Part shown: one piece after another, positions 56,072-63,506 of the stretch | Layout: each line of letters starts with the position of its first letter | How positions within the stretch are numbered: position 1 is the stretch's first letter | IMG/VR virus record: IMGVR_UViG_3300015265_000001 | Span: 1-64,000 of that record | Strand: one strand, 5' to 3' | DNA: 64,000 bases | Notes under the pieces: model-generated | Seen by the model: only the letters and a program-made list of their open reading frames with translations | What the model was told of the DNA's origin: nothing | Database searches by the model: none | Program-made: the position numbers and the translations under genes

Positions 56072-59000
56072 ATGGATACAACCGCTAACACGGTAGACGA
56101 GGGTAAGCTCAAGTTTGCCAAAGACCTCATGAACTATCTTGGGGCACAGAACCTTCCACGTGAATTGATCGACGACCGTAAGAACCGAATTGATTGGGAG
56201 AAGCGCACCGAAGACGAACTGGTCATGGCTCACTTCAATGAAGACAGTCTGTTCAAGATCAAGACAGTTCGTTTCCTGAAGGACTTCGCTCGTTACGGCG
56301 CTATCCCGGACAAGACTACTCGTAACACCAGTTTCATTCGCACTGCTGAGATCTTCAGACAGCAGGGCATTAAGAACTTCAACTTCATCCTGCAACTGAA
56401 CAACCCCGCGCTAATCGGTGTAGACCCTTATGCCGAAGACTTGACCAATGAGCAAAAGCTCATGATCATGTACGAATGCGAAAACAACTTCTGGTACTTC
56501 CTCCGCGAAGTTTGTAAGCTGCGGGCTGACCGCCAGTTCCTGGCGAATCGCGGCAACATCAGTTTTATCTGGAACTACCTGAACCATATCACCCAGTACA
56601 TGATCATGCCTCGCCAGCAAGGTAAGTACCAGGACGATAACGATAAGGTTCGCATGGCGGACGGGACCTGGTCGCGGATTGGCGACCTGCAAGCAGGCGA
56701 TCAGGTTATTGACCGTTATGGCAAGAAGTCTACGGTCATTGGCATCCATGCTCAGGGTATCAAGCGTCTGTACAAGGTATACGCCAGCGATGGTCGTTAT
56801 GTAAGTGCGGGTCCAGAACACCTGTGGACGTTGGCTGACCATAGCCGCAGTGTTAACGGTGAGCCTGTCTGGGACGACTACAGTACCGCCGAGATGATCA
56901 CCAAACTCAAGGATGGGGTTAAGCTTGAGTTCCCGTTGATTGAAACCGAGAAAGGTGAGGCCAAGGACTTCAAGGTTCATCCGTATGTCATGGGGACTTT
57001 GATTGGCGGTCAACGCATTGGCAGTTTCCTGCTGATCAAGAAAGTCTCGGATGCTTGCGATGCTTTCCTCATGGAGAATCTTCCTGAGGGATTGGAACTC
57101 GTTTGCAAAGGTAATCGTCGGGAAATCCATTCCACTGATGAGAACGTCAAGATCTCGTTTGATCCAGACATGGGTGTGCCGGCTGCGTACCTGGAAGGTG
57201 CCTGGGAAGATCGTCTGCTGCTGTTACAGGCGTTTCTGGATCAAGGGGTAGTCGGCGATGAGGGTGTGATCTACAAGACCACCAGCAGGCTTGTAGGCGG
57301 TCATGTGCAATACCTTGCTCGTGGCCTTGGTGGTACTGCTCTGAAAGAGGGTAGCGAGTTTACCGTGACTCTGCCGGCATCTATGGCCTTGTTTAAGTAC
57401 AAGCCTGTGGAGGACGAGTTTGTATTCGAGAACCGTTTGTTTGTAGATCGGATCGAGTACTACGGTGAAGCCCCTTGTACCTGCATTGAAGTGGATAACG
57501 AGGAACACCTCTACGTTACCGATGACTTCCTGGTAACCCACAACACGGTATCGGTTCAGGTGATTGCATTCTGGCTGACGTACATCATGGGTCGAGGTTA
57601 TAAGTCTCACCTGGTAACCCTGAAGTCGGATAACCGGGCTCAGTTCATTGACGCGATCAAGAAGATCCGGACGTGTCTGCCGAAGTACCTGGTTAACCCA
57701 ACCTGGAAGGACAAGGATGCGGGTAACTACCTGACGTATAAAGCGTTTGGGGAGGAGCACGTTAACACCCTGACCATCTCGGTACCACAGATGGGTGAAG
57801 ACGCCGCAGGTGACCTTGGACGGGGTCTCACGGTAGGCACCACGAACTACGACGAGCCAGGTTACATCAACTGGATCGAGGCGATCATCAACGGATGCTC
57901 TCCTTCTGCTTTGACAGAGATGGAGATTTGTCGTGACAGTGGGATTCCTTACGGGATCAGTTACATCACGACACCGAACACGACTCTTCACCCAAGCGGT
58001 GAGTTCATGTTCGAGAAGCTGATGACCTCCACCGAGTGGCGTGAGAAGTTCTTTGACTCCTACAGCGAAAGTCATCTGAAGATGCGTCTGCTGAAAGCGT
58101 CTCCGAAGAAGACCACGTCGCCATCTGTGGCTCTGGTGTATAACTACCTGCAACTGGGTAAAGACAAAGCCTGGGTACGCGAAACGATTGACAGCCTGAA
58201 CCTCAGTTTGGCTAAGGCGAAGATCGACTTGCTCCTGATGTGGGTTGAAGACGGTGAGAACCGTGTGTTCGACGACATCACTCGTGAAGCGATTAACAAC
58301 GTGAAGCGGGATAAGGTTTGGAGTAAGGAGTATCGTGACACGGGTCTGTTTGTAGACTTCTTTGTCACGCAGCAAGAACTGCTGGAGATGGCGAAGAAGA
58401 GCCATAACGACTTCTTCCTCATTGGGGTGGATACCTCATCGGCTATCAACAAGGACGCCTGTACGCTGATTATCCGCAGTATGCGAACCGGTAAGGTAAT
58501 TGGGGTGGGTCGTTATCAGTTGGCGTTCCTGGACGATGTGACGGGCATTATCGTCGACATGTTGTCTACTCTGGAAAACAGTCTGCTGGTGATTGAGCGT
58601 AACTATGCTCACCACATGATCGATAACCTGCTGGTGATGTTGCCAGCTAAAGGGATGGATCCGTTCGCCAAGATCTATAACCAGATCTTCCAGGATCCGG
58701 TCAACCACTCGAAAGAGTATGAGGCGGTACAGCACACCAAGTTCGCCCACCGCAGTAAGAGCTTCTACCTGAAATACAAACAGTTCTTTGGGTTCAACAC
58801 CACGGCTAAATCCCGTGAGACCCTGTACGGTTTGATTCAGGAAGCTGTGGGGGTAACAGGGTATGGGCTGAACTACGATCGACTTGCAGATGAGTTGATC
58901 AACCTCAAAACCAAGGGAGACCGTATTGACCACGACAGTAAACAGCACGATGACTTGGTTATCGCCTGGCTGCTGACGTACTGGTTCATCAAGCTGGGGC

Positions 59001-59329
59001 AGAACAAACCGATGTACGGGATCCCTACCGGGATTCAGTTGTCGGACACTGTTAACCTGCTGGATGCTGGTAAGCGGAAGAATCAACCTGATGTGGATCC
59101 GAGCATCATCTCCTTCATGGACAATATCAAGAAACGTGTACAGAAGTTGACGGAAGAGTTGTTGAACACCAACGACAATATCCTGGCTATGCGTCTGGAA
59201 GCTGAGATTAACAAGCTCAGCAGAATGTTGCCTCCAGACACGGCTAAGCTCCTGACCGTAGATAGTCTCCTTGAAGACGCTAAACTCGAAAGGGCTAAGC
59301 GGATGCTGCGGGAACGTAAACGCGCGTAA
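56072..59329 (+). CDS. terL: Terminase large subunit (phiKZ gp25-like), intein-containing
   Basis: NFWYFLRE, Walker A PRQQGK|T split by an intein, GRGLT…YDE Walker B, and nuclease motifs IGVDTS, VIERN and HDDLVIAWLL. Confidence 0.92.
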   Translation: MDTTANTVDEGKLKFAKDLMNYLGAQNLPRELIDDRKNRIDWEKRTEDELVMAHFNEDSLFKIKTVRFLKDFARYGAIPDKTTRNTSFIRTAEIFRQQGIKNFNFILQLNNPALIGVDPYAEDLTNEQKLMIMYECENNFWYFLREVCKLRADRQFLANRGNISFIWNYLNHITQYMIMPRQQGKYQDDNDKVRMADGTWSRIGDLQAGDQVIDRYGKKSTVIGIHAQGIKRLYKVYASDGRYVSAGPEHLWTLADHSRSVNGEPVWDDYSTAEMITKLKDGVKLEFPLIETEKGEAKDFKVHPYVMGTLIGGQRIGSFLLIKKVSDACDAFLMENLPEGLELVCKGNRREIHSTDENVKISFDPDMGVPAAYLEGAWEDRLLLLQAFLDQGVVGDEGVIYKTTSRLVGGHVQYLARGLGGTALKEGSEFTVTLPASMALFKYKPVEDEFVFENRLFVDRIEYYGEAPCTCIEVDNEEHLYVTDDFLVTHNTVSVQVIAFWLTYIMGRGYKSHLVTLKSDNRAQFIDAIKKIRTCLPKYLVNPTWKDKDAGNYLTYKAFGEEHVNTLTISVPQMGEDAAGDLGRGLTVGTTNYDEPGYINWIEAIINGCSPSALTEMEICRDSGIPYGISYITTPNTTLHPSGEFMFEKLMTSTEWREKFFDSYSESHLKMRLLKASPKKTTSPSVALVYNYLQLGKDKAWVRETIDSLNLSLAKAKIDLLLMWVEDGENRVFDDITREAINNVKRDKVWSKEYRDTGLFVDFFVTQQELLEMAKKSHNDFFLIGVDTSSAINKDACTLIIRSMRTGKVIGVGRYQLAFLDDVTGIIVDMLSTLENSLLVIERNYAHHMIDNLLVMLPAKGMDPFAKIYNQIFQDPVNHSKEYEAVQHTKFAHRSKSFYLKYKQFFGFNTTAKSRETLYGLIQEAVGVTGYGLNYDRLADELINLKTKGDRIDHDSKQHDDLVIAWLLTYWFIKLGQNKPMYGIPTGIQLSDTVNLLDAGKRKNQPDVDPSIISFMDNIKKRVQKLTEELLNTNDNILAMRLEAEINKLSRMLPPDTAKLLTVDSLLEDAKLERAKRMLRERKRA
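56627..57544 (+). mobile_element. Class-3 intein (306 aa, Tyr1) in the terminase Walker A, with a degenerate LAGLIDADG endonuclease
   Basis: GK|YQDDNDKVRMADGTWSRIGDLQAGDQV…AGPEHLW…PYVMGTLIGG…RLLLLQAFLD…YLARGLGG…CTCIEVDNEEHLYVTDDFLVTHN|T. Confidence 0.9.
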
Positions 59330-59336
59330 ACACCTA

Positions 59337-59370
59337 AGCCCTGGAGCCTCCTTACGGGGGCTCCAGGGTT
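59337..59370. terminator. ~15-bp hairpin between convergent genes, followed by TTATGGCTG
   Basis: AGCCCTGGAGCCTCC-ttac-GGGGGCTCCAGGGTT (includes G-U pairs). Confidence 0.75.
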
Positions 59371-59377
59371 ATGGCTG

Positions 59378-60061
59378 TTATTCGACTGAACTGTGTGTAA
59401 CGGTCAGTGCTTTGATAACGCACACTGACCCATCATCAGCTGCGGTGGTATCAGAGTAGTCGACCTGGTTATAGACGCCGCCATGAAATTGCAGCAGTTG
59501 TCTTTGCCAGGAGTAGTTCATTTGCAGATTGCACGGTTCGAATGCTACCCCGTTGCAAGTACCATTGATCTGCACTTTACCGCTTCGGGTCACCCCGATA
59601 TTAAGTTTGAATTTGGTGCCCAGTGGAACGCCTGCGCAAACAGTAACGTTTTCAATATCCGGGCGATCAAAGCTAGCTCGGAAACCAGCGGTGATATTAC
59701 CCCGGTTCCAGAACACTTTCAGTGGAGGGGTGTTTGCGTCCTTGACATGGATCTGGGCGATGACAACCTTTTGCGCCGAGTTGACCTTTTCCAGGATCAT
59801 CTCTTGGCGGCTCCAGTGACGATCCGTACTACTCAGAGACCAGTACGCGGATTCCTTCCATTCACAGCGTGTGCGTTTAACGCTCTTACTCGATGCTCCA
59901 AGGGTCAAGGCGGTCATCTGGAGAGATCCGTCTTCCAATAAACGAATCACCTCAGGACAGCGTTCCAGGGCTTCCAGGCCAGGTATTTCGAGAGCTACCG
60001 GGTTGGTATCTGAAACGGGTAGTGGTGTAGCAATGAGAAAGTTGCTGATGTCAACAGACAT
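59378..60061 (-). CDS. Polysaccharide lyase family 7 (alginate lyase)
   Basis: All three PL7 signature regions are present: RTRCEWKE (RxELR-like), IAQIH, and FHGGVYNQ (YFKAGxYxQ-like); no signal peptide. Confidence 0.85.
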   Translation of the reverse strand: MSVDISNFLIATPLPVSDTNPVALEIPGLEALERCPEVIRLLEDGSLQMTALTLGASSKSVKRTRCEWKESAYWSLSSTDRHWSRQEMILEKVNSAQKVVIAQIHVKDANTPPLKVFWNRGNITAGFRASFDRPDIENVTVCAGVPLGTKFKLNIGVTRSGKVQINGTCNGVAFEPCNLQMNYSWQRQLLQFHGGVYNQVDYSDTTAADDGSVCVIKALTVTHSSVE

Positions 60062-60102
60062 GACGGTCTCGCAATTAGTGGGCGTATCGAAATTAAGGAA
60101 TT

Positions 60103-60143
60103 TAACTCCCGCCCTAGCCCGTTAAGACTAGGGGTAGGAGTTA
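60103..60143 (-). terminator. Imperfect hairpin between the 60163-60594 gene and the lyase
   Basis: TAACTCCCGCCCTAG…CTAGGGGTAGGAGTTA. Confidence 0.45.
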
Positions 60144-60162
60144 GGGGAGGAGTTACATAAAA

Positions 60163-60594
60163 TTAGAACCACTCCGTACGTTCGATGATCACGTTGAGCA
60201 TGGTTTCCATACAGGACAGTTGTGACACCATCAGCTGTATTTCCCATTCAGTAACGTGAAAGGTATCCACGTCATTGATCTCTTTTTTCAGTGCAGCGAT
60301 GTCATGCTCCAGCTGGACTTTCTTGGCGAAAACCTTTTGTTGCTCTGGAGTGTATTTTCTCATGTCGCCCATATTGAGGTAGGCATTTTCATGCTGTTCC
60401 TTGGGCGACCAGGAGATGTAGCCTTCGTGATTAGGATGGTTAGGTTTCCCTCCATCCAGGTACTCGACCAAATAGCCTTCATCAGTGCCATCTTCATCAG
60501 CTGGGAGATCCCAGCCTCTGTAATCGTTGTACGCCAATCTTGTCATTGGCTCTGACTTAACGATTTTCGTTCCTACGAAGTGTTGAAGAACCAT
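60163..60594 (-). CDS. Two-domain phage protein: GTK…GYLVEY…GYISWSPK N-domain plus a crAss001_48-like helical C-domain
   Basis: N-terminal FVGTKIVKSEPMT…EGYLVEY…GYISWSPKEQHENAY; C-terminal QQKV…L…QLMVSQLSCM…IIER…F. Confidence 0.7.
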   Translation of the reverse strand: MVLQHFVGTKIVKSEPMTRLAYNDYRGWDLPADEDGTDEGYLVEYLDGGKPNHPNHEGYISWSPKEQHENAYLNMGDMRKYTPEQQKVFAKKVQLEHDIAALKKEINDVDTFHVTEWEIQLMVSQLSCMETMLNVIIERTEWF

Positions 60595-60610
60595 GACTGG
60601 TCTCCGTGTG

Positions 60611-61177
60611 TTAAGAGTTGAGTAGCATGCTCACATCAGAGCGACCCCCGTTACCAAACTCGTACTGTACGTACTTGAAACGAGACATGGCGTCGCCCAT
60701 ACGTTGAGCCCGTGTTTCAAACAGCTCGAAGTAACCTTCAACGAGGTCGACCTCATCCACTCCTTTTACAAGGATTACTCCCGCTGGATAAGCGACCCCA
60801 CCCAGGGATTGTAACATCTCCAGGTTTTCTTTCAAGACAGTCTGGAAGGAGTCCATGCGGTAATCCATCCAGCGCATGTCATGAATCAACCCGCCCTTAA
60901 CCAGCACAACTTCGTACTGACTGAGAGCGGGAAGCAGGGTTTCTTTGTAGAACTTTGAACGTGCCTCAAGAAGAGCCACGATCTTTTCTTCGTTGCTCTT
61001 ATCGGGGTGAGTGAGGGTCATCCAGAGTTCACGGTCGTCCGACAGGGCGTTGGATCCCACACCAACGTCAGAACAGATACCAACAGTCTTACCTTCGAGG
61101 GTCAGCTTGTCTTTGATCTGGTCAATAGCGGCCGCCACGGTCAAGTCGTTCTGACCATCCACGTTAAAGTAATGCAT
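60611..61177 (-). CDS. Thymidylate-kinase-like protein lacking the P-loop (putative pseudokinase)
   Basis: By eye it is colinear with the TMK at 43466 (LLEARSKFYKETLLPALSQYEVVLV vs LNAARVDHVEKVIKPSMAEGKIVLC), but it has no GxGKT or DR motif. Confidence 0.5.
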   Translation of the reverse strand: MHYFNVDGQNDLTVAAAIDQIKDKLTLEGKTVGICSDVGVGSNALSDDRELWMTLTHPDKSNEEKIVALLEARSKFYKETLLPALSQYEVVLVKGGLIHDMRWMDYRMDSFQTVLKENLEMLQSLGGVAYPAGVILVKGVDEVDLVEGYFELFETRAQRMGDAMSRFKYVQYEFGNGGRSDVSMLLNS

Positions 61178-61188
61178 TGAAACACTCC

Positions 61189-62658
61189 TTACTCAAAATA
61201 ATCCTTGCTCAGGATACGCAGCACAATGTACAGACACAGTGCGGTGCGTACCAGTTGCACGGTTTGTTGGGTTTTAACGCCCGTACGTTCTTTGACGATC
61301 TCGTCGCCAAGGGTTCGGATAACCTTTACGGTATCGTTCTTGCTACGAGGAGCCCCGTAGGCACCACGCATTTTCACCAAGACGTCATACACGTTGGTTT
61401 TCTTAATACCATTGGTGTGCAGGTATTCAAACATGTGCTGAAGTACTGCATCAGCAAACTGTTTGTATTCCGGTTTCTTCGGGTTGTTGTACAGCGCAGG
61501 AAACTGCTGAATCACATACGCCAACTTATCCCGAGGAGTGCCTTCCAGCGCATCTGCCGAATACTTGATCAGCTCGTCCTTGTAAAACGAGGTTTCTTCG
61601 GTGAGGATGCGATCGAGGTAAAGACCGTACTGGGTAACTTCTTTGGTCTGAGACTTCAGCGCCAGTTCATCGCCCAGGTTTACCTTAGCCCCGTCGATGC
61701 GCACGATGTCGAGTTTGTTCTTGACGTCGTGGAAGACCTTGTTGATGTCGTTGATCGCCCGACGCAACCGGTTCTGGATATCCCCGACCATGTAGACGAT
61801 TTTCTTGTCGTCGTCCATTTTGGTGAAAGCGTCGTAGTGGATACCGGTCTTTGGGTTGATGATGAACTCAGCCCGCGCCTCGATCAATGCCCGCCAGCTG
61901 CCGTAACGCTTGATGTCGTATTTCAGACTCAGGCGGTTGTAGGTCTCCATCACGACTTCTTTGCGAGCCATGAACGGATAGTCGTTGTGAATGATCGAGG
62001 TCAAACACTTGTAGTGATACATCGACAAGATATCGATCATCGCCTGGTGCTTGGTGTCCTTGCTCAGACTCGACTTGTTGACCCGGTACAGCAGGTATGG
62101 AATGGTCAGGTTGAAGGTATCACCCACAACACTCCATTCCTTGTTCACCGCTTTGGCTGCGTGGAGGTTCTCTTTGAGTTCCTCTTCGTCGACGTCAAAG
62201 ATCTCAGAGAACCACTGGTTACGGTCCGCTGTGGTGAAGGTGATCTTGTGCAGTCCCAGGTAGGGAGAACCGAAGAACTCCATATGGCTGACCACGCCCA
62301 CGCTGCGGGTTACGAATGCATACACGTAACGACGCAGTGCCTTGGCCCACTTCTCATCCACAACCAAGAAGTCGCCGAACTTGTTGCAGATGTCGAGGAT
62401 GGCGTGGTTGGTTTCGAAGTTGACGTCCTTCAGCAGAGCCTCGGCGCCGGTTACCGATTGGATCTCGTTGTTATCCAACGGATACAGGTAAAGACCACCC
62501 TGCGCCAGGATGCTGTGTTGTTCCATCCCTTCGAACAGACTGAGTACGTCTTCATTCAGATAGTTGAGACGATCCCAGTATTCACGTTCAGCCGATTCGG
62601 CCGCTCGATTGCTACTGAGGTCCTCCGGGTTGTACTGTTTCGGTAAAGTGGCGAACAT
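61189..62658 (-). CDS. Conserved jumbo-phage protein, probably a virion head protein
   Basis: 489 aa; acidic N-terminal propeptide-like segment ending VTGAE|A (E73); HMEFFGSPYLG and L.LKYDIKRYGSW motifs. Confidence 0.65.
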   Translation of the reverse strand: MFATLPKQYNPEDLSSNRAAESAEREYWDRLNYLNEDVLSLFEGMEQHSILAQGGLYLYPLDNNEIQSVTGAEALLKDVNFETNHAILDICNKFGDFLVVDEKWAKALRRYVYAFVTRSVGVVSHMEFFGSPYLGLHKITFTTADRNQWFSEIFDVDEEELKENLHAAKAVNKEWSVVGDTFNLTIPYLLYRVNKSSLSKDTKHQAMIDILSMYHYKCLTSIIHNDYPFMARKEVVMETYNRLSLKYDIKRYGSWRALIEARAEFIINPKTGIHYDAFTKMDDDKKIVYMVGDIQNRLRRAINDINKVFHDVKNKLDIVRIDGAKVNLGDELALKSQTKEVTQYGLYLDRILTEETSFYKDELIKYSADALEGTPRDKLAYVIQQFPALYNNPKKPEYKQFADAVLQHMFEYLHTNGIKKTNVYDVLVKMRGAYGAPRSKNDTVKVIRTLGDEIVKERTGVKTQQTVQLVRTALCLYIVLRILSKDYFE

Positions 62659-63506
62659 CAGAATCTCCTTGGAACAGAGCGACGTACCGCGTCAGTCACA
62701 CGTTGACGATCACTGTAAGCCATGCGCTTGGTCCATTCAGTCGTGAGGTATTCATGGTAGTCCTTCCAGGCATCTCGGTATTCCAAGATATCGTCCTTGA
62801 TGTCGCTCAAACTGACACCACTACGGATGATGGCTTCCTGGGTAGGTCGGCGGCAGGTGCGATAGATATACGCCTTAACTGCCAGTTCCACGAGGTGAGC
62901 AAAGTGTTCATGTTGGCGTGTCGAAATACTGCTCAAACCTTCGTCATACTCCAGGATCATTTTGGCCGACATCGAGTAAGTACCCGAGTTCAAACCAAAG
63001 ATCACGAAGCAGTTGTTGCCGGTCATGTGGATGTTGTTGTAAGTCACCGGCATCTGACGGTTGGAACTGAGGCTGTCGATCAACGCTTCAGTCATGTCCG
63101 TGATCGAGCCCTGACCGCACATGTCGTTGGTATTGGTGCTCATGCCCAGCATACCAGTCGACGAGGTCATCGAACCCAGGTAGATCTCGGTAACCGAAAT
63201 GATCTTGCGACCACCGGTAACGATATCCGGTACGTTGACTTCGATGCAGGCGTTACCCAAGTCGCGGATACGAGCGCCGCTCAGGTCAATGAACTCAGTC
63301 TTACCGCCGTTGGCATTGCAAGCCGGCAGTACAGTACGGTGAATCACTTTCTCACGAATGCCTTGCTCCACGGTGGTGTGGTTCACAAGGTTGTACCAGT
63401 TGCCTGCGAAGTTACCGTTGGGGGCTTCGAAAGCAAGTTTAAGCAGGTAGTCGTCGATGTCACAGTTCGTGACCCGATTGATGGCATAGTCCACCGCATT
63501 ACTCAT
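62658..63506 (-). CDS. Virion structural protein (phiKZ gp32-like)
   Basis: MSNAVDYAI…I…LKLAF, V…VLP.CN..GG and LVELAVKAYIY motifs; GGAG RBS. Confidence 0.65.
   Translation of the reverse strand: MSNAVDYAINRVTNCDIDDYLLKLAFEAPNGNFAGNWYNLVNHTTVEQGIREKVIHRTVLPACNANGGKTEFIDLSGARIRDLGNACIEVNVPDIVTGGRKIISVTEIYLGSMTSSTGMLGMSTNTNDMCGQGSITDMTEALIDSLSSNRQMPVTYNNIHMTGNNCFVIFGLNSGTYSMSAKMILEYDEGLSSISTRQHEHFAHLVELAVKAYIYRTCRRPTQEAIIRSGVSLSDIKDDILEYRDAWKDYHEYLTTEWTKRMAYSDRQRVTDAVRRSVPRRF

What the first reader, a model, noticed from the sequence alone, without database searches (positions are those of the whole stretch)
59378..60061. Stand-alone PL7 alginate lyase inserted beside the terminase
Seen: the three PL7 motifs with catalytic His (QIH) and Tyr (VYNQ) retained. 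There is no signal peptide or tail-fibre anchor, and hairpins flank the gene like a cassette. Established: PL7 enzymes cleave alginate, QIH is associated with polyG preference, and alginate is the mucoid Pseudomonas exopolysaccharide. Phage depolymerases are usually beta-helical tail spikes. Inference: a host-derived soluble enzyme released at lysis to open the biofilm matrix. The substitutions RCEWKE and FHGG may shift its substrate preference.
Basis: partly seen in the sequence, partly recalled or inferred. Interest (0 to 1): 0.6.

Follow-up and report, generated by a model that had tools for sequence, protein, structure and literature searches.

The report
Small alginate-lyase gene in jumbo phage
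A soil Pseudomonas jumbo phage carries an intact, well-conserved 227-residue enzyme of the alginate-lyase family PL7 next to its DNA-packaging gene, probably to cut the host's slime layer; the gene is real but of a known kind, long resident in such phages rather than freshly taken from a host.

Summary
Window 59378..60061 (-) encodes a 227-aa protein that is one full-length PL7 domain (Pfam PF08787, 135 bits against a cut-off of 29.7). The AlphaFold model (pLDDT 91.6) matches P. aeruginosa PA1167 at TM 0.80-0.82. The catalytic Arg65, Gln103, His105 and Tyr197 are kept. There is no signal peptide and no second domain.

The window comes from a complete 226,985-bp uncultivated relative of Pseudomonas phage EL, from a rhizosphere metagenome.

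Parts of the interpretation need correction:
- RTRCEWKE and FHGG are not phage-specific changes. They mark a Pseudomonas-restricted PL7 subfamily found in chromosomes, prophages and jumbo phages.
- The strong downstream hairpin is the terminase terminator. Phage EL has it too, and EL lacks the lyase.
- The gene is not a recent host capture. Its GC equals the phage's, dN/dS is 0.07, and jumbo-phage copies group apart from the bacterial clades, with weak support. The nearest bacterial proteins are 52-62% identical.
- The slot between the head gene and the terminase is variable, and the lyase sits there in several positions and both orientations.

Release at lysis as a soluble enzyme is the best reading, but it is inferred. 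Side finding: bacterial homologues often lie behind a CI/LexA-type repressor gene or an SOS box. This is a new member of a known kind, of moderate interest.

The parts
59378..60061 (-). CDS of a 227-aa single-domain PL7 (Alginate_lyase2) protein
   Evidence: ORF. PF08787 at 135 bits, full length. phrog_31475 at E 4e-99. AF2 model at pLDDT 91.6. Best PDB fold match is PA1167 (1vav), TM 0.80/0.82.
59852..59875 (-). Motif 1, R63-T-R65-C-E67-W-K69-E70, the counterpart of R(S/T)E(L/V)R
   Evidence: Aligned to YPRSELRE of A1-II'. R63, T64, R65, E67 and W68 are invariant in 22 phage and bacterial homologues.
59747..59755 (-). Motif 2, Q103-I-H105, with the catalytic His
   Evidence: Aligned to QIH of PA1167 and A1-II'. 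Q103 and H105 are invariant. Bacterial members have QMH.
59465..59488 (-). Motif 3, F192-H-G-G-V-Y197-N-Q199, with the catalytic Tyr
   Evidence: Aligned to FKAGNYVQ of A1-II'. The Y284F mutant 2zab identifies the Y of VYNQ as the catalytic Tyr. H193, G194, G195, Y197, N198 and Q199 are invariant. DNA read directly.
59337..59370 (.). 15-bp GC-rich hairpin between the converging terminase and lyase genes, a likely bidirectional terminator
   Evidence: -36.7 kcal/mol with z -6.7 on the plus strand and -30.8 kcal/mol with z -5.7 on the minus strand. A homologous hairpin lies downstream of the terminase in phage EL, which lacks the lyase, and in relatives L005 and L008.
60103..60143 (-). Imperfect hairpin followed by a U-rich tract, the likely terminator of the upstream 143-aa gene; it makes the lyase its own transcription unit
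   Evidence: Fold (z -1.9). The same position in L005 holds an 18-bp stem of different sequence that still pairs (z -4.3).
56072..59329 (+). Terminase large subunit (1085 aa) with an intein-like insert; neighbour, not part of the lyase function
   Evidence: 64% identical to the EL-group terminase. EL gp011 is annotated as terminase large subunit.
60163..61177 (-). Two small accessory genes (143 aa and 188 aa) of unknown function upstream of the lyase, in the variable slot
   Evidence: ORFs. PHROG families of unknown function for the 143-aa protein; no PHROG or Pfam match for the 188-aa protein. Present, absent or rearranged among EL-like relatives. EL has only a 98-aa gp012 here.
61189..63506 (-). 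Conserved head-region genes (homologues of EL gp013 and gp014) that bound the variable slot on the far side
   Evidence: 67% identical to EL gp013, annotated as 'putative structural head protein' in Erwinia phage RisingSun. PF24302 DUF7484 in the 282-aa neighbour of relatives.

Best explanation
The gene encodes a functional, single-domain polysaccharide lyase of family PL7. The carrier is an uncultivated 227-kb jumbo phage of soil or rhizosphere Pseudomonas, related to phage EL. The protein keeps the PL7 beta-jelly-roll and the catalytic Arg, Gln, His and Tyr, so it should cleave a polyuronate by beta-elimination. The likeliest substrate is the alginate that fluorescent pseudomonads secrete. 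The protein has no export signal and no virion-attachment domain. It is therefore most likely made in the infected cell's cytoplasm, set free when the cell lyses, and acts on the surrounding matrix so that progeny reach neighbouring cells. The gene is a long-standing accessory gene of Pseudomonas jumbo phages. It is kept under purifying selection and is shuffled within a variable slot between the head genes and the terminase. Shown here: family membership, fold, catalytic residues, conservation, composition and gene context. Inferred: the substrate, the timing of expression and release at lysis.
For: Family and fold. PF08787 matches full length at 135 bits. The AF2 model has pLDDT 91.6. The top 40 or so PDB fold matches are PL7 lyases, led by PA1167 at TM 0.80-0.82. 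R65, E67, Q103, H105 and Y197 align with Arg146, Glu148, Gln189, His191 and Tyr284 of A1-II' (the A1-II' numbers other than Y284 and H191 come from my own knowledge of that enzyme).

Functional constraint. dN/dS is 0.067 against the 92%-identical relative L091 and 0.075-0.13 against more distant ones. 66 columns are invariant across 22 homologues.

Long residence. GC is 50.6% in a 51.6% genome. The Psa21 copy is 41.6% in a 41.9% stretch, and bacterial copies are 56-60%. The EL-like copies form a clade with support 98/93. Relatives on 214-317 kb contigs carry the gene.

No export or anchor. The domain spans residues 3-223 of 227, and the N-terminus is acidic and forms a strand of the fold.

No other recognisable depolymerase. 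No Pfam match for beta-helix, pectate lyase or SGNH esterase in the 227-kb genome.

Precedent. Soluble phage depolymerases released at lysis are an accepted category. Small phage alginate lyases of 30-37 kDa with no identified protein sequence are on record for Azotobacter and Pseudomonas phages (PMC5380687).

Supporting context. The distant homologue in temperate phage AH02 lies two genes upstream of the holin, with an esterase gene next to it.
Against: No activity, expression or localisation data exist for any member of this subfamily. PL7 also contains beta-glucuronan lyases (7nde appears among the fold matches). Residues next to the catalytic ones differ from characterised enzymes: Lys to His in FHGG, Arg to Lys and Leu to Trp in RCEWKE. 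Alginate is therefore the likeliest substrate, not a proven one. Similarity to the nearest characterised enzyme is low (PA1167, 24% identity, sequence E 4.5e-9). The gene ends a cluster that includes head genes, so a virion role is not excluded. Cultured EL-group phages of P. aeruginosa, the classic mucoid alginate producer, lack the gene.
Confidence: 0.6

Rival explanations
1. The lyase is a virion component, carried in or on the particle without a dedicated anchor domain. It acts at adsorption, clearing alginate so the tail can reach its receptor.
For: The gene lies at the end of a leftward cluster that contains head-protein homologues and abuts the terminase. In the P. putida jumbo phages (Aura group) the 39%-identical homologue lies next to a 'minor tail protein' gene. 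Phage polysaccharide lyases are often classed as virion-associated (PMC5380687; bioRxiv 10.1101/2024.12.20.629349).
Against: There is no N-terminal adaptor, no trimerisation domain and no beta-helix; the whole protein is one jelly-roll domain. In Psa21-like phages the gene sits among tRNA and HNH-endonuclease genes, not structural genes. In prophages it sits by the immunity region, not the tail module. It is separated from the upstream genes by a terminator-like hairpin.
Confidence: 0.15
2. The protein is a PL7-fold enzyme with a substrate or role other than opening an alginate matrix. It might act on another polyuronate of the envelope or matrix. It might instead have an intracellular or lysogeny-related role tied to the DNA-damage response.
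For: The subfamily differs from characterised PL7 enzymes in substrate-site motifs (RCEW[KTS]E, FHGG). PL7 includes glucuronan lyases. The whole subfamily lacks signal peptides, although alginate is made outside the cytoplasm (my knowledge of the pathway). 42 of 80 bacterial homologues follow a CI/LexA-type S24 repressor gene. 30 of 72 have a LexA-box-like CTGT-N8-ACAG within 300 nt upstream, against about 0.004 expected.
Against: All four catalytic residues of the alginate-lyase mechanism are kept. The best structural matches are alginate lyases, first of all PA1167, also without a signal peptide and from Pseudomonas. SOS or repressor control fits release by lysis equally well. No match to any defence-system model.
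Confidence: 0.2
3. One reading: a recently host-derived gene cassette, bounded by hairpins, dropped beside the terminase.
For: Closest cellular homologues are exclusively Pseudomonas (80 of 80 loci). The slot is variable, and phage EL lacks the gene. Orientation and position differ among relatives.
Against: Composition is fully that of the phage. Identity to any bacterial copy is at most about 62%. Jumbo-phage copies group together and none nests in a bacterial clade. The same position is kept in relatives whose terminase is only 71-95% identical. The strong hairpin pre-exists in EL without the gene.
Confidence: 0.05

Closest known systems
PA1167 of Pseudomonas aeruginosa (PDB 1vav), a small PL7 alginate lyase
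   Same: Same size (222 against 227 aa), single beta-jelly-roll domain, QIH and (V/L)Y motifs, Pseudomonas origin. It is the best fold match, TM 0.80/0.82, and the best sequence match among solved structures. From my knowledge it also lacks a signal peptide.
   Different: Only 24% identical, E 4.5e-9. PA1167 has the canonical YFKAG and lacks the RTRCEW / FHGG signature. The window protein belongs to a separate subfamily whose members are 52-92% identical to it.
PSA21_405, 'polysaccharide lyase family 7 protein', of jumbo phage Psa21 (Tepukevirus, P. syringae pv. actinidiae)
   Same: 60% identical over the full length, the same subfamily signature, in a nucleus-forming-type jumbo Pseudomonas phage. 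It falls in the same jumbo-phage group in the tree.
   Different: It lies in a tRNA / HNH-endonuclease / RtcB region, not beside the terminase. The phage belongs to a different lineage (305 kb, 42% GC). It is annotated but, as far as the held literature shows, not studied.
Chromosomal and prophage PL7 proteins (224 aa) of the P. fluorescens, mandelii and putida groups
   Same: 52-62% identical, same length, same motifs, no signal peptide.
   Different: GC is 56-60%. They form two well-supported clades separate from the phage copies. They frequently follow an HTH-S24 repressor gene, with or without DUF1654, lie inside lambdoid prophages, or have a LexA-box-like site upstream.
Soluble phage depolymerases released at lysis, and the small alginate lyases of Azotobacter phage and Pseudomonas phage PT-6
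   Same: The proposed way of working: a small (25-37 kDa) enzyme that degrades host exopolysaccharide and need not be part of a tail spike (PMC5380687).
   Different: That review's table gives no protein accession for those enzymes ('ND'), so homology cannot be tested. Soluble status here is inferred, not measured.
Beta-helical tail-spike depolymerases (for example the pectate-lyase-like spikes of Pseudomonas phages phi15 and AF)
   Same: They probably serve the same end, getting phage through host polysaccharide.
   Different: Different fold (trimeric beta-helix against monomer-sized jelly roll), an N-terminal virion adaptor and a much larger size. No beta-helix or pectate-lyase Pfam match exists in this genome.

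Membership tests
Polysaccharide lyase family 7 (Pfam Alginate_lyase2, PF08787) | Significant full-length match to the family HMM | tested here: met
   135.1 bits against a gathering cut-off of 29.7. Residues 3-223 match profile positions 1-225 of 225. Confirmed on the genome.
Polysaccharide lyase family 7 (Pfam Alginate_lyase2, PF08787) | Beta-jelly-roll (beta-sandwich) fold with a substrate cleft | tested here: met
   Predicted only. The AF2 model has pLDDT 91.6 and is nearly all-beta. Foldseek top hits are PL7 lyases at TM 0.74-0.84 with probability 1.00.
Polysaccharide lyase family 7 (Pfam Alginate_lyase2, PF08787) | Conserved motifs R(S/T)E(L/V)R, Q(I/V)H and YFKAG(V/I)YNQ with catalytic Arg, Gln, His and Tyr | tested here: met
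   R65, E67, Q103, H105 and Y197 are present and invariant in the subfamily. The flanking residues deviate: RCEWKE, and FHGG in place of FKAG.
Polysaccharide lyase family 7 (Pfam Alginate_lyase2, PF08787) | Beta-eliminative cleavage of alginate or another polyuronate | not testable with these tools
   Needs an enzyme assay. No characterised member of this subfamily was found in the held literature.
Polysaccharide lyase family 7 (Pfam Alginate_lyase2, PF08787) | CAZy / dbCAN subfamily assignment | not tested
   dbCAN is not among the tools. NCBIfam has no model that matches.
Soluble (non-virion) phage depolymerase released at lysis | No virion-attachment domain and no secretion signal | tested here: met
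   A single domain fills the protein. The N-terminus is acidic and forms part of the fold.
Soluble (non-virion) phage depolymerase released at lysis | Present in lysate but absent from purified virions; halo around plaques | not testable with these tools
   The phage is uncultivated. No RNA run holds the locus.
Tail-spike depolymerase (trimeric beta-helix receptor-binding protein) | Right-handed beta-helix catalytic domain plus an N-terminal adaptor | tested here: not met
   Jelly-roll fold, 227 aa, no extra domain.
Recently acquired host gene (moron) | Composition unlike the phage and close identity to a host gene | tested here: not met
   GC is 50.6% against 51.6% for the window. The best bacterial identity is about 62%. 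The gene is not nested in a bacterial clade.

The most novel reading that the evidence does not exclude
This PL7 subfamily may be a lysis-coupled matrix-opening enzyme family of Pseudomonas. It is cytoplasmic and has no signal peptide. In cells and prophages it would be switched on by DNA damage, through a LexA box or a CI-type S24 repressor. In infected cells it would be made by jumbo phages. In every case it would reach its extracellular substrate only when the producing cell bursts, helping phage progeny, and possibly tailocins, to move through alginate. The jumbo-phage gene would then be one arm of a widespread system that has not been described.
Probability: 0.3. Interest if true: 0.65.

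Novelty: new member of a known kind. Interest (0 to 1): 0.4.

Why it matters
Small phage alginate lyases have been known by activity for decades, but a standard review still lists no protein accession for them. This subfamily is a concrete, testable candidate, and it has a cultured carrier (Psa21). It is compact at 25 kDa and probably tolerant of Pseudomonas-type alginate, which makes it a possible anti-biofilm reagent. It also shows that uncultivated soil relatives of phage EL carry a matrix-degrading enzyme that the clinical P. aeruginosa EL-group phages lack. The link between the bacterial homologues and SOS or CI-type control, if real, would connect DNA damage, lysis and matrix turnover in soil pseudomonads.

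Tried and rejected
- Nucleotide search of the phage collection with the locus found nothing, so protein mode was used instead.
- The sigma-70 promoter and terminator scan did not report either flanking hairpin and found no promoter for the lyase. Jumbo phages use their own RNA polymerases, so this says little. I looked at phage EL's annotated promoter but did not find or pursue a shared motif upstream of the lyase. Expression timing remains unknown.
- PADLOC defence models gave no match for the lyase, the 274-aa S24 repressor or DUF1654. The 244-aa repressor gave only generic HTH hits.
- NCBIfam has no model for the lyase.
- BFVD viral structures gave only giant-virus PL7-like proteins, which are not informative.
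- Literature searches for jumbo-phage or prophage PL7 lyases, Psa21, the P. putida jumbo phages and SOS-regulated alginate lyase found no study of this subfamily.
- Outgroup rooting of the tree with Aura and AH02 gives very long branches (1.4-7.2 changes per column), so the direction of transfer between bacteria and phages was left open.
- The locus used to inspect an 'orphan' bacterial copy (L179) has no SOS box itself. The box is present in other orphan loci such as L049.
- Not used: read laying, because no RNA holder was found; the large representative-protein search, because the family was already clear; complex prediction, because no binding claim is made.

Full report
**What is at the coordinates.** Window 59378..60061 on the minus strand is an ATG-initiated ORF of 227 codons. 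It converges on a 1085-codon ORF (56072..59329, +), and their stop codons are 48 nt apart. Pfam's Alginate_lyase2 model (PF08787, CAZy family PL7) matches residues 3-223 over its whole length of 225 positions, at E 4e-39 and 135 bits against a cut-off of 29.7. PHROGs places the protein in phrog_31475, a family of unknown function. A sequence search of solved structures aligns them to YPRSELRE, QIH and FKAGNYVQ of Sphingomonas A1-II'. The deposited Y284F mutant differs from wild type at exactly the Y of that last motif, so Tyr197 is the catalytic tyrosine and His105 is the counterpart of His191. An AlphaFold model built on 22 homologues is confident (pLDDT 91.6, pTM 0.89) and almost entirely beta. 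Its best matches among solved structures are PL7 alginate lyases, led by P. aeruginosa PA1167 (TM 0.80/0.82).

**No signal peptide, no anchor.** The domain fills the protein. The first 30 residues contain no Lys or Arg, carry three acidic residues, and residues 8-15 form a modelled strand of the jelly roll. This is inspection, not a SignalP run, but it is unambiguous. The bacterial homologues start in the same way.

**Which genome.** The window is the first 64 kb of an IMG/VR virus record of 226,985 bp with direct terminal repeats, rated complete. Its head-region protein (61189..62658) is 65-68% identical to gp013 of Pseudomonas phage EL and its close relatives. The terminase is 64% identical to that of an EL-group phage. 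A PhuZ-type tubulin lies nearby in relatives. The only sequencing run that holds the whole locus is a rhizosphere metagenome, which may be the source sample. Runs holding a quarter to a half of its sampled words are mostly soil metagenomes. It is therefore an uncultivated EL-like jumbo phage, almost certainly of a soil Pseudomonas.

**The 'substitutions' are a subfamily signature.** A word-based search of 5.8 billion proteins returned 393 homologues. In an alignment of 22 of them, R-T-R-(C/T)-E-W and H-G-G-x-Y-N-Q are essentially invariant in phage and bacterial members alike. Bacteria have Q-M-H where most phages have Q-I-H. RCEWKE and FHGG therefore define a Pseudomonas-restricted PL7 subfamily. 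That subfamily is only distantly related to PA1167 (24% identity, E 4.5e-9). These residues are not adaptations of this phage. They may still bear on substrate choice for the whole subfamily, since Lys to His sits next to the catalytic Tyr. From my own knowledge, Pseudomonas alginate lacks G-blocks, so polyG specificity would make little biological sense here.

**Where else the gene occurs.**
- Cultured phages: 13 phage records. Psa21 of P. syringae pv. actinidiae is 60% identical and already annotated 'polysaccharide lyase family 7 protein'. Nine P. putida jumbo phages are 38-40% identical. The temperate phage AH02 is 28% identical, annotated 'alginate lyase', with an esterase gene next to it and the holin two genes further downstream. 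No P. aeruginosa phage carries it.
- Uncultivated jumbo phages: many contigs of 130-317 kb at 60-92% identity.
- Bacteria: one homologue in each of at least 80 Pseudomonas species of the fluorescens, mandelii and putida groups, at 52-62% identity.
- Small IMG/VR contigs of 15-60 kb, several from isolate genomes, look like prophages.

**Is it host-derived?** Four lines of evidence bear on this.
- Composition. The gene is 50.6% GC in a 51.6% window. The Psa21 copy is 41.6% in a 41.9% stretch. Bacterial copies are 56-60% in 58-61% surroundings. Each copy matches its carrier.
- Selection. dN/dS is 0.067 against the 92%-identical relative, and 0.075-0.13 against more distant ones where dS is saturated.
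- Phylogeny. A 163-row tree has three groups: all 25 jumbo-phage rows (SH-aLRT 85), a fluorescens-group clade of bacteria and prophages (99), and a putida-group clade (96). A careful 62-row tree keeps the jumbo phages on one side of a branch, but weakly (55/76). It gives strong support (98/93) to a clade of the 12 EL-like copies, including the window.
- No jumbo-phage copy nests within a bacterial clade.

The outgroups are too distant to root the tree, so the direction of the original transfer is open. The safe statement is that the gene is an old resident of Pseudomonas jumbo phages, not a recent capture.

**The hairpins and the 'cassette'.** Both hairpins exist. The strong one (59337-59370; z -6.7) has a clear homologue downstream of the terminase in phage EL, which has no lyase, and in relatives L005 and L008. 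It is the terminator shared by two converging transcription units. The weaker one (60103-60143, minus strand) follows the stop codon of the 143-aa gene and is followed by a U-rich tract. In L005 the same position holds an 18-bp stem of different sequence that still pairs. The lyase is therefore probably its own short transcription unit, but the hairpins do not mark a mobile element.

The slot itself is variable. EL has only a 98-aa gene between gp013 and the terminase. Among EL-like relatives I found five arrangements:
- gp013, 188-aa gene, 143-aa gene, lyase, converging on the terminase (the window, L091, L005, L097; in L094 no 188-aa match was found).
- The same flanking genes, with the lyase inverted so that it follows the terminase 27 nt downstream on the same strand (L095, L103).
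- gp013, a 188-aa-like gene, lyase (L092).
- gp013, lyase, a 188-aa-like gene (L099, L101, L111).
- gp013, lyase (L107).

In L095 and L103 the terminase is 88-89% identical to the window's, but the lyase is only 65-67% identical. L005 has the same terminase identity and a lyase at 76%. This points to rearrangement or allele exchange in a hot spot, which gives the cassette idea partial support on different grounds. In Psa21-like phages the gene sits in a tRNA / HNH / RtcB region instead.

**How it most likely works.** Shown: an intact PL7 catalytic domain under purifying selection, without an export signal or virion adaptor, in a phage genome with no Pfam-detectable beta-helix, pectate-lyase or SGNH-esterase protein. 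Inferred: the substrate is alginate, which fluorescent pseudomonads make, particularly under water stress (my knowledge). Also inferred: the enzyme accumulates in the cytoplasm and meets its substrate only after lysis, thinning the matrix for progeny. Soluble depolymerases released at lysis are an accepted class, and small phage alginate lyases with no identified protein sequence are on record (PMC5380687). I put about 0.6 on this overall: near certainty for PL7 membership, about 0.75 for uronan lyase activity, and about 0.5-0.6 for the soluble, lysis-released mode. The main rivals are a virion-borne enzyme (0.15) and a different substrate or role (0.2).

**A side finding that bears on function.** In bacteria the homologue is often wired to DNA-damage-type control.
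- In 42 of 80 species it follows an HTH-Peptidase_S24 (CI/LexA-like) repressor gene on the same strand, in some cases with a divergent DUF1654 gene between them.
- In one P. putida chromosome this module is the immunity region of a lambdoid prophage. Elsewhere it sits among ordinary housekeeping genes.
- A LexA-box-like CTGT-N8-ACAG, mostly CTGTATAT.C.TACAG, lies within 300 nt upstream in 30 of 72 scorable loci. These include 13 of the 38 loci in which no S24 repressor gene was found. The rest of the same loci carry about 0.004 such sites per 300 nt, and none of 22 jumbo-phage loci has one.

Two caveats apply. The loci are orthologous and so not independent. The box lies in a divergent intergenic region, so it may serve the small upstream gene rather than, or as well as, the lyase. 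I found no paper on this. It fits a picture in which this signal-less lyase is made when a cell is about to lyse, whatever the cause.

**Comparison with known things and novelty.** The protein is a member of PL7 by every test available here. It is not a tail-spike depolymerase. It is closest in kind to PA1167 and closest in sequence to an already annotated but unstudied Psa21 gene. A soil-virome preprint counts 33 PL7 genes among soil viruses and classes them, by family alone, as virion or lysis associated. I therefore rate it a new member of a known kind, of moderate interest (0.4). The more novel reading, a lysis-coupled matrix-opening family shared by the SOS response, prophages and jumbo phages, is not excluded (about 0.3).

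**Limits.** No dbCAN, no SignalP, and no expression or proteome data. Tree rooting is unresolved. Structure and active-site statements rest on a predicted model and on sequence alignment.

Noticed in passing
window 56072..59329 (+), residues about 184-500 of the terminase: The terminase large subunit carries an intein-like insert of about 310 aa. There is a weak Pfam Hint match, and the N- and C-terminal blocks match DnaB and gp41-1 mini-inteins in the PDB (E 2e-5). The insert ends ...LVTHN|T. PhiKZ-type terminases align in two pieces that skip it, while unrelated phage proteins match only this segment. EL-group, Vibrio and Aeromonas jumbo phages align across the whole length, insert included.
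   Followed up: partly
L174:8572-10675, L175:9012-10675, L171:7345-10675 and 42 of the 80 bacterial loci L011-L090: Bacterial homologues of the lyase lie directly downstream of, and on the same strand as, an HTH-Peptidase_S24 (CI/LexA-like) repressor gene. In some loci a divergent DUF1654 gene lies between them. In L171 the module is part of a lambdoid prophage immunity region. In others it stands alone among housekeeping genes.
   Followed up: partly
L049:5864-5879, and equivalent sites about 140 or 225 nt upstream of the lyase in 30 of 72 bacterial loci: A LexA-box-like palindrome (CTGTATATACATACAG and variants) lies in the intergenic region upstream of the bacterial lyase gene, about 100-fold more often than elsewhere in the same loci. 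It is absent from all jumbo-phage loci. The region is divergent, so it is unclear which gene the box controls.
   Followed up: partly
L095:2708-7189 and L103:2714-7184 compared with window 56072..60594: In two EL-like relatives the lyase gene is inverted. It follows the terminase on the same strand after 27 nt, with no hairpin between them. Its sequence is more diverged (65-67%) than the flanking terminase (88-89%) would predict, which suggests allele replacement or inversion in a hot spot.
   Followed up: partly
L003:4505-8034 (phage AH02): In the 39-kb temperate phage AH02, a distant PL7 homologue (28% identity, 285 aa) sits between an 'aminohydrolase' and an 'esterase', two genes upstream of the holin. 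This could be an alginate lyase plus deacetylase pair expressed with the lysis genes.
   Followed up: no
L002:6001-12152 (phage vB_PpuM-Aura): In the roughly 200-kb P. putida phages the 39%-identical PL7 homologue is annotated 'hypothetical protein'. It lies next to a 948-aa 'minor tail protein' gene and a 798-aa 'lipase' gene on the opposite strand.
   Followed up: no
window 60163..60594 (-): The 143-aa protein upstream of the lyase has a sub-threshold match to the crAss001_48-related family (PF21825, E 0.003) and matches four PHROG families of unknown function. Its presence varies among relatives.
   Followed up: no
L016 and L030 (P. mandelii and Pseudomonas sp. GM50 contigs): An RtcB-like gene 58-65% identical to the jumbo-phage RtcB lies about 5 kb from the bacterial lyase homologue. 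RtcB is also a neighbour of the lyase in Psa21-like phages. This may be coincidence or a shared mobile region.
   Followed up: no
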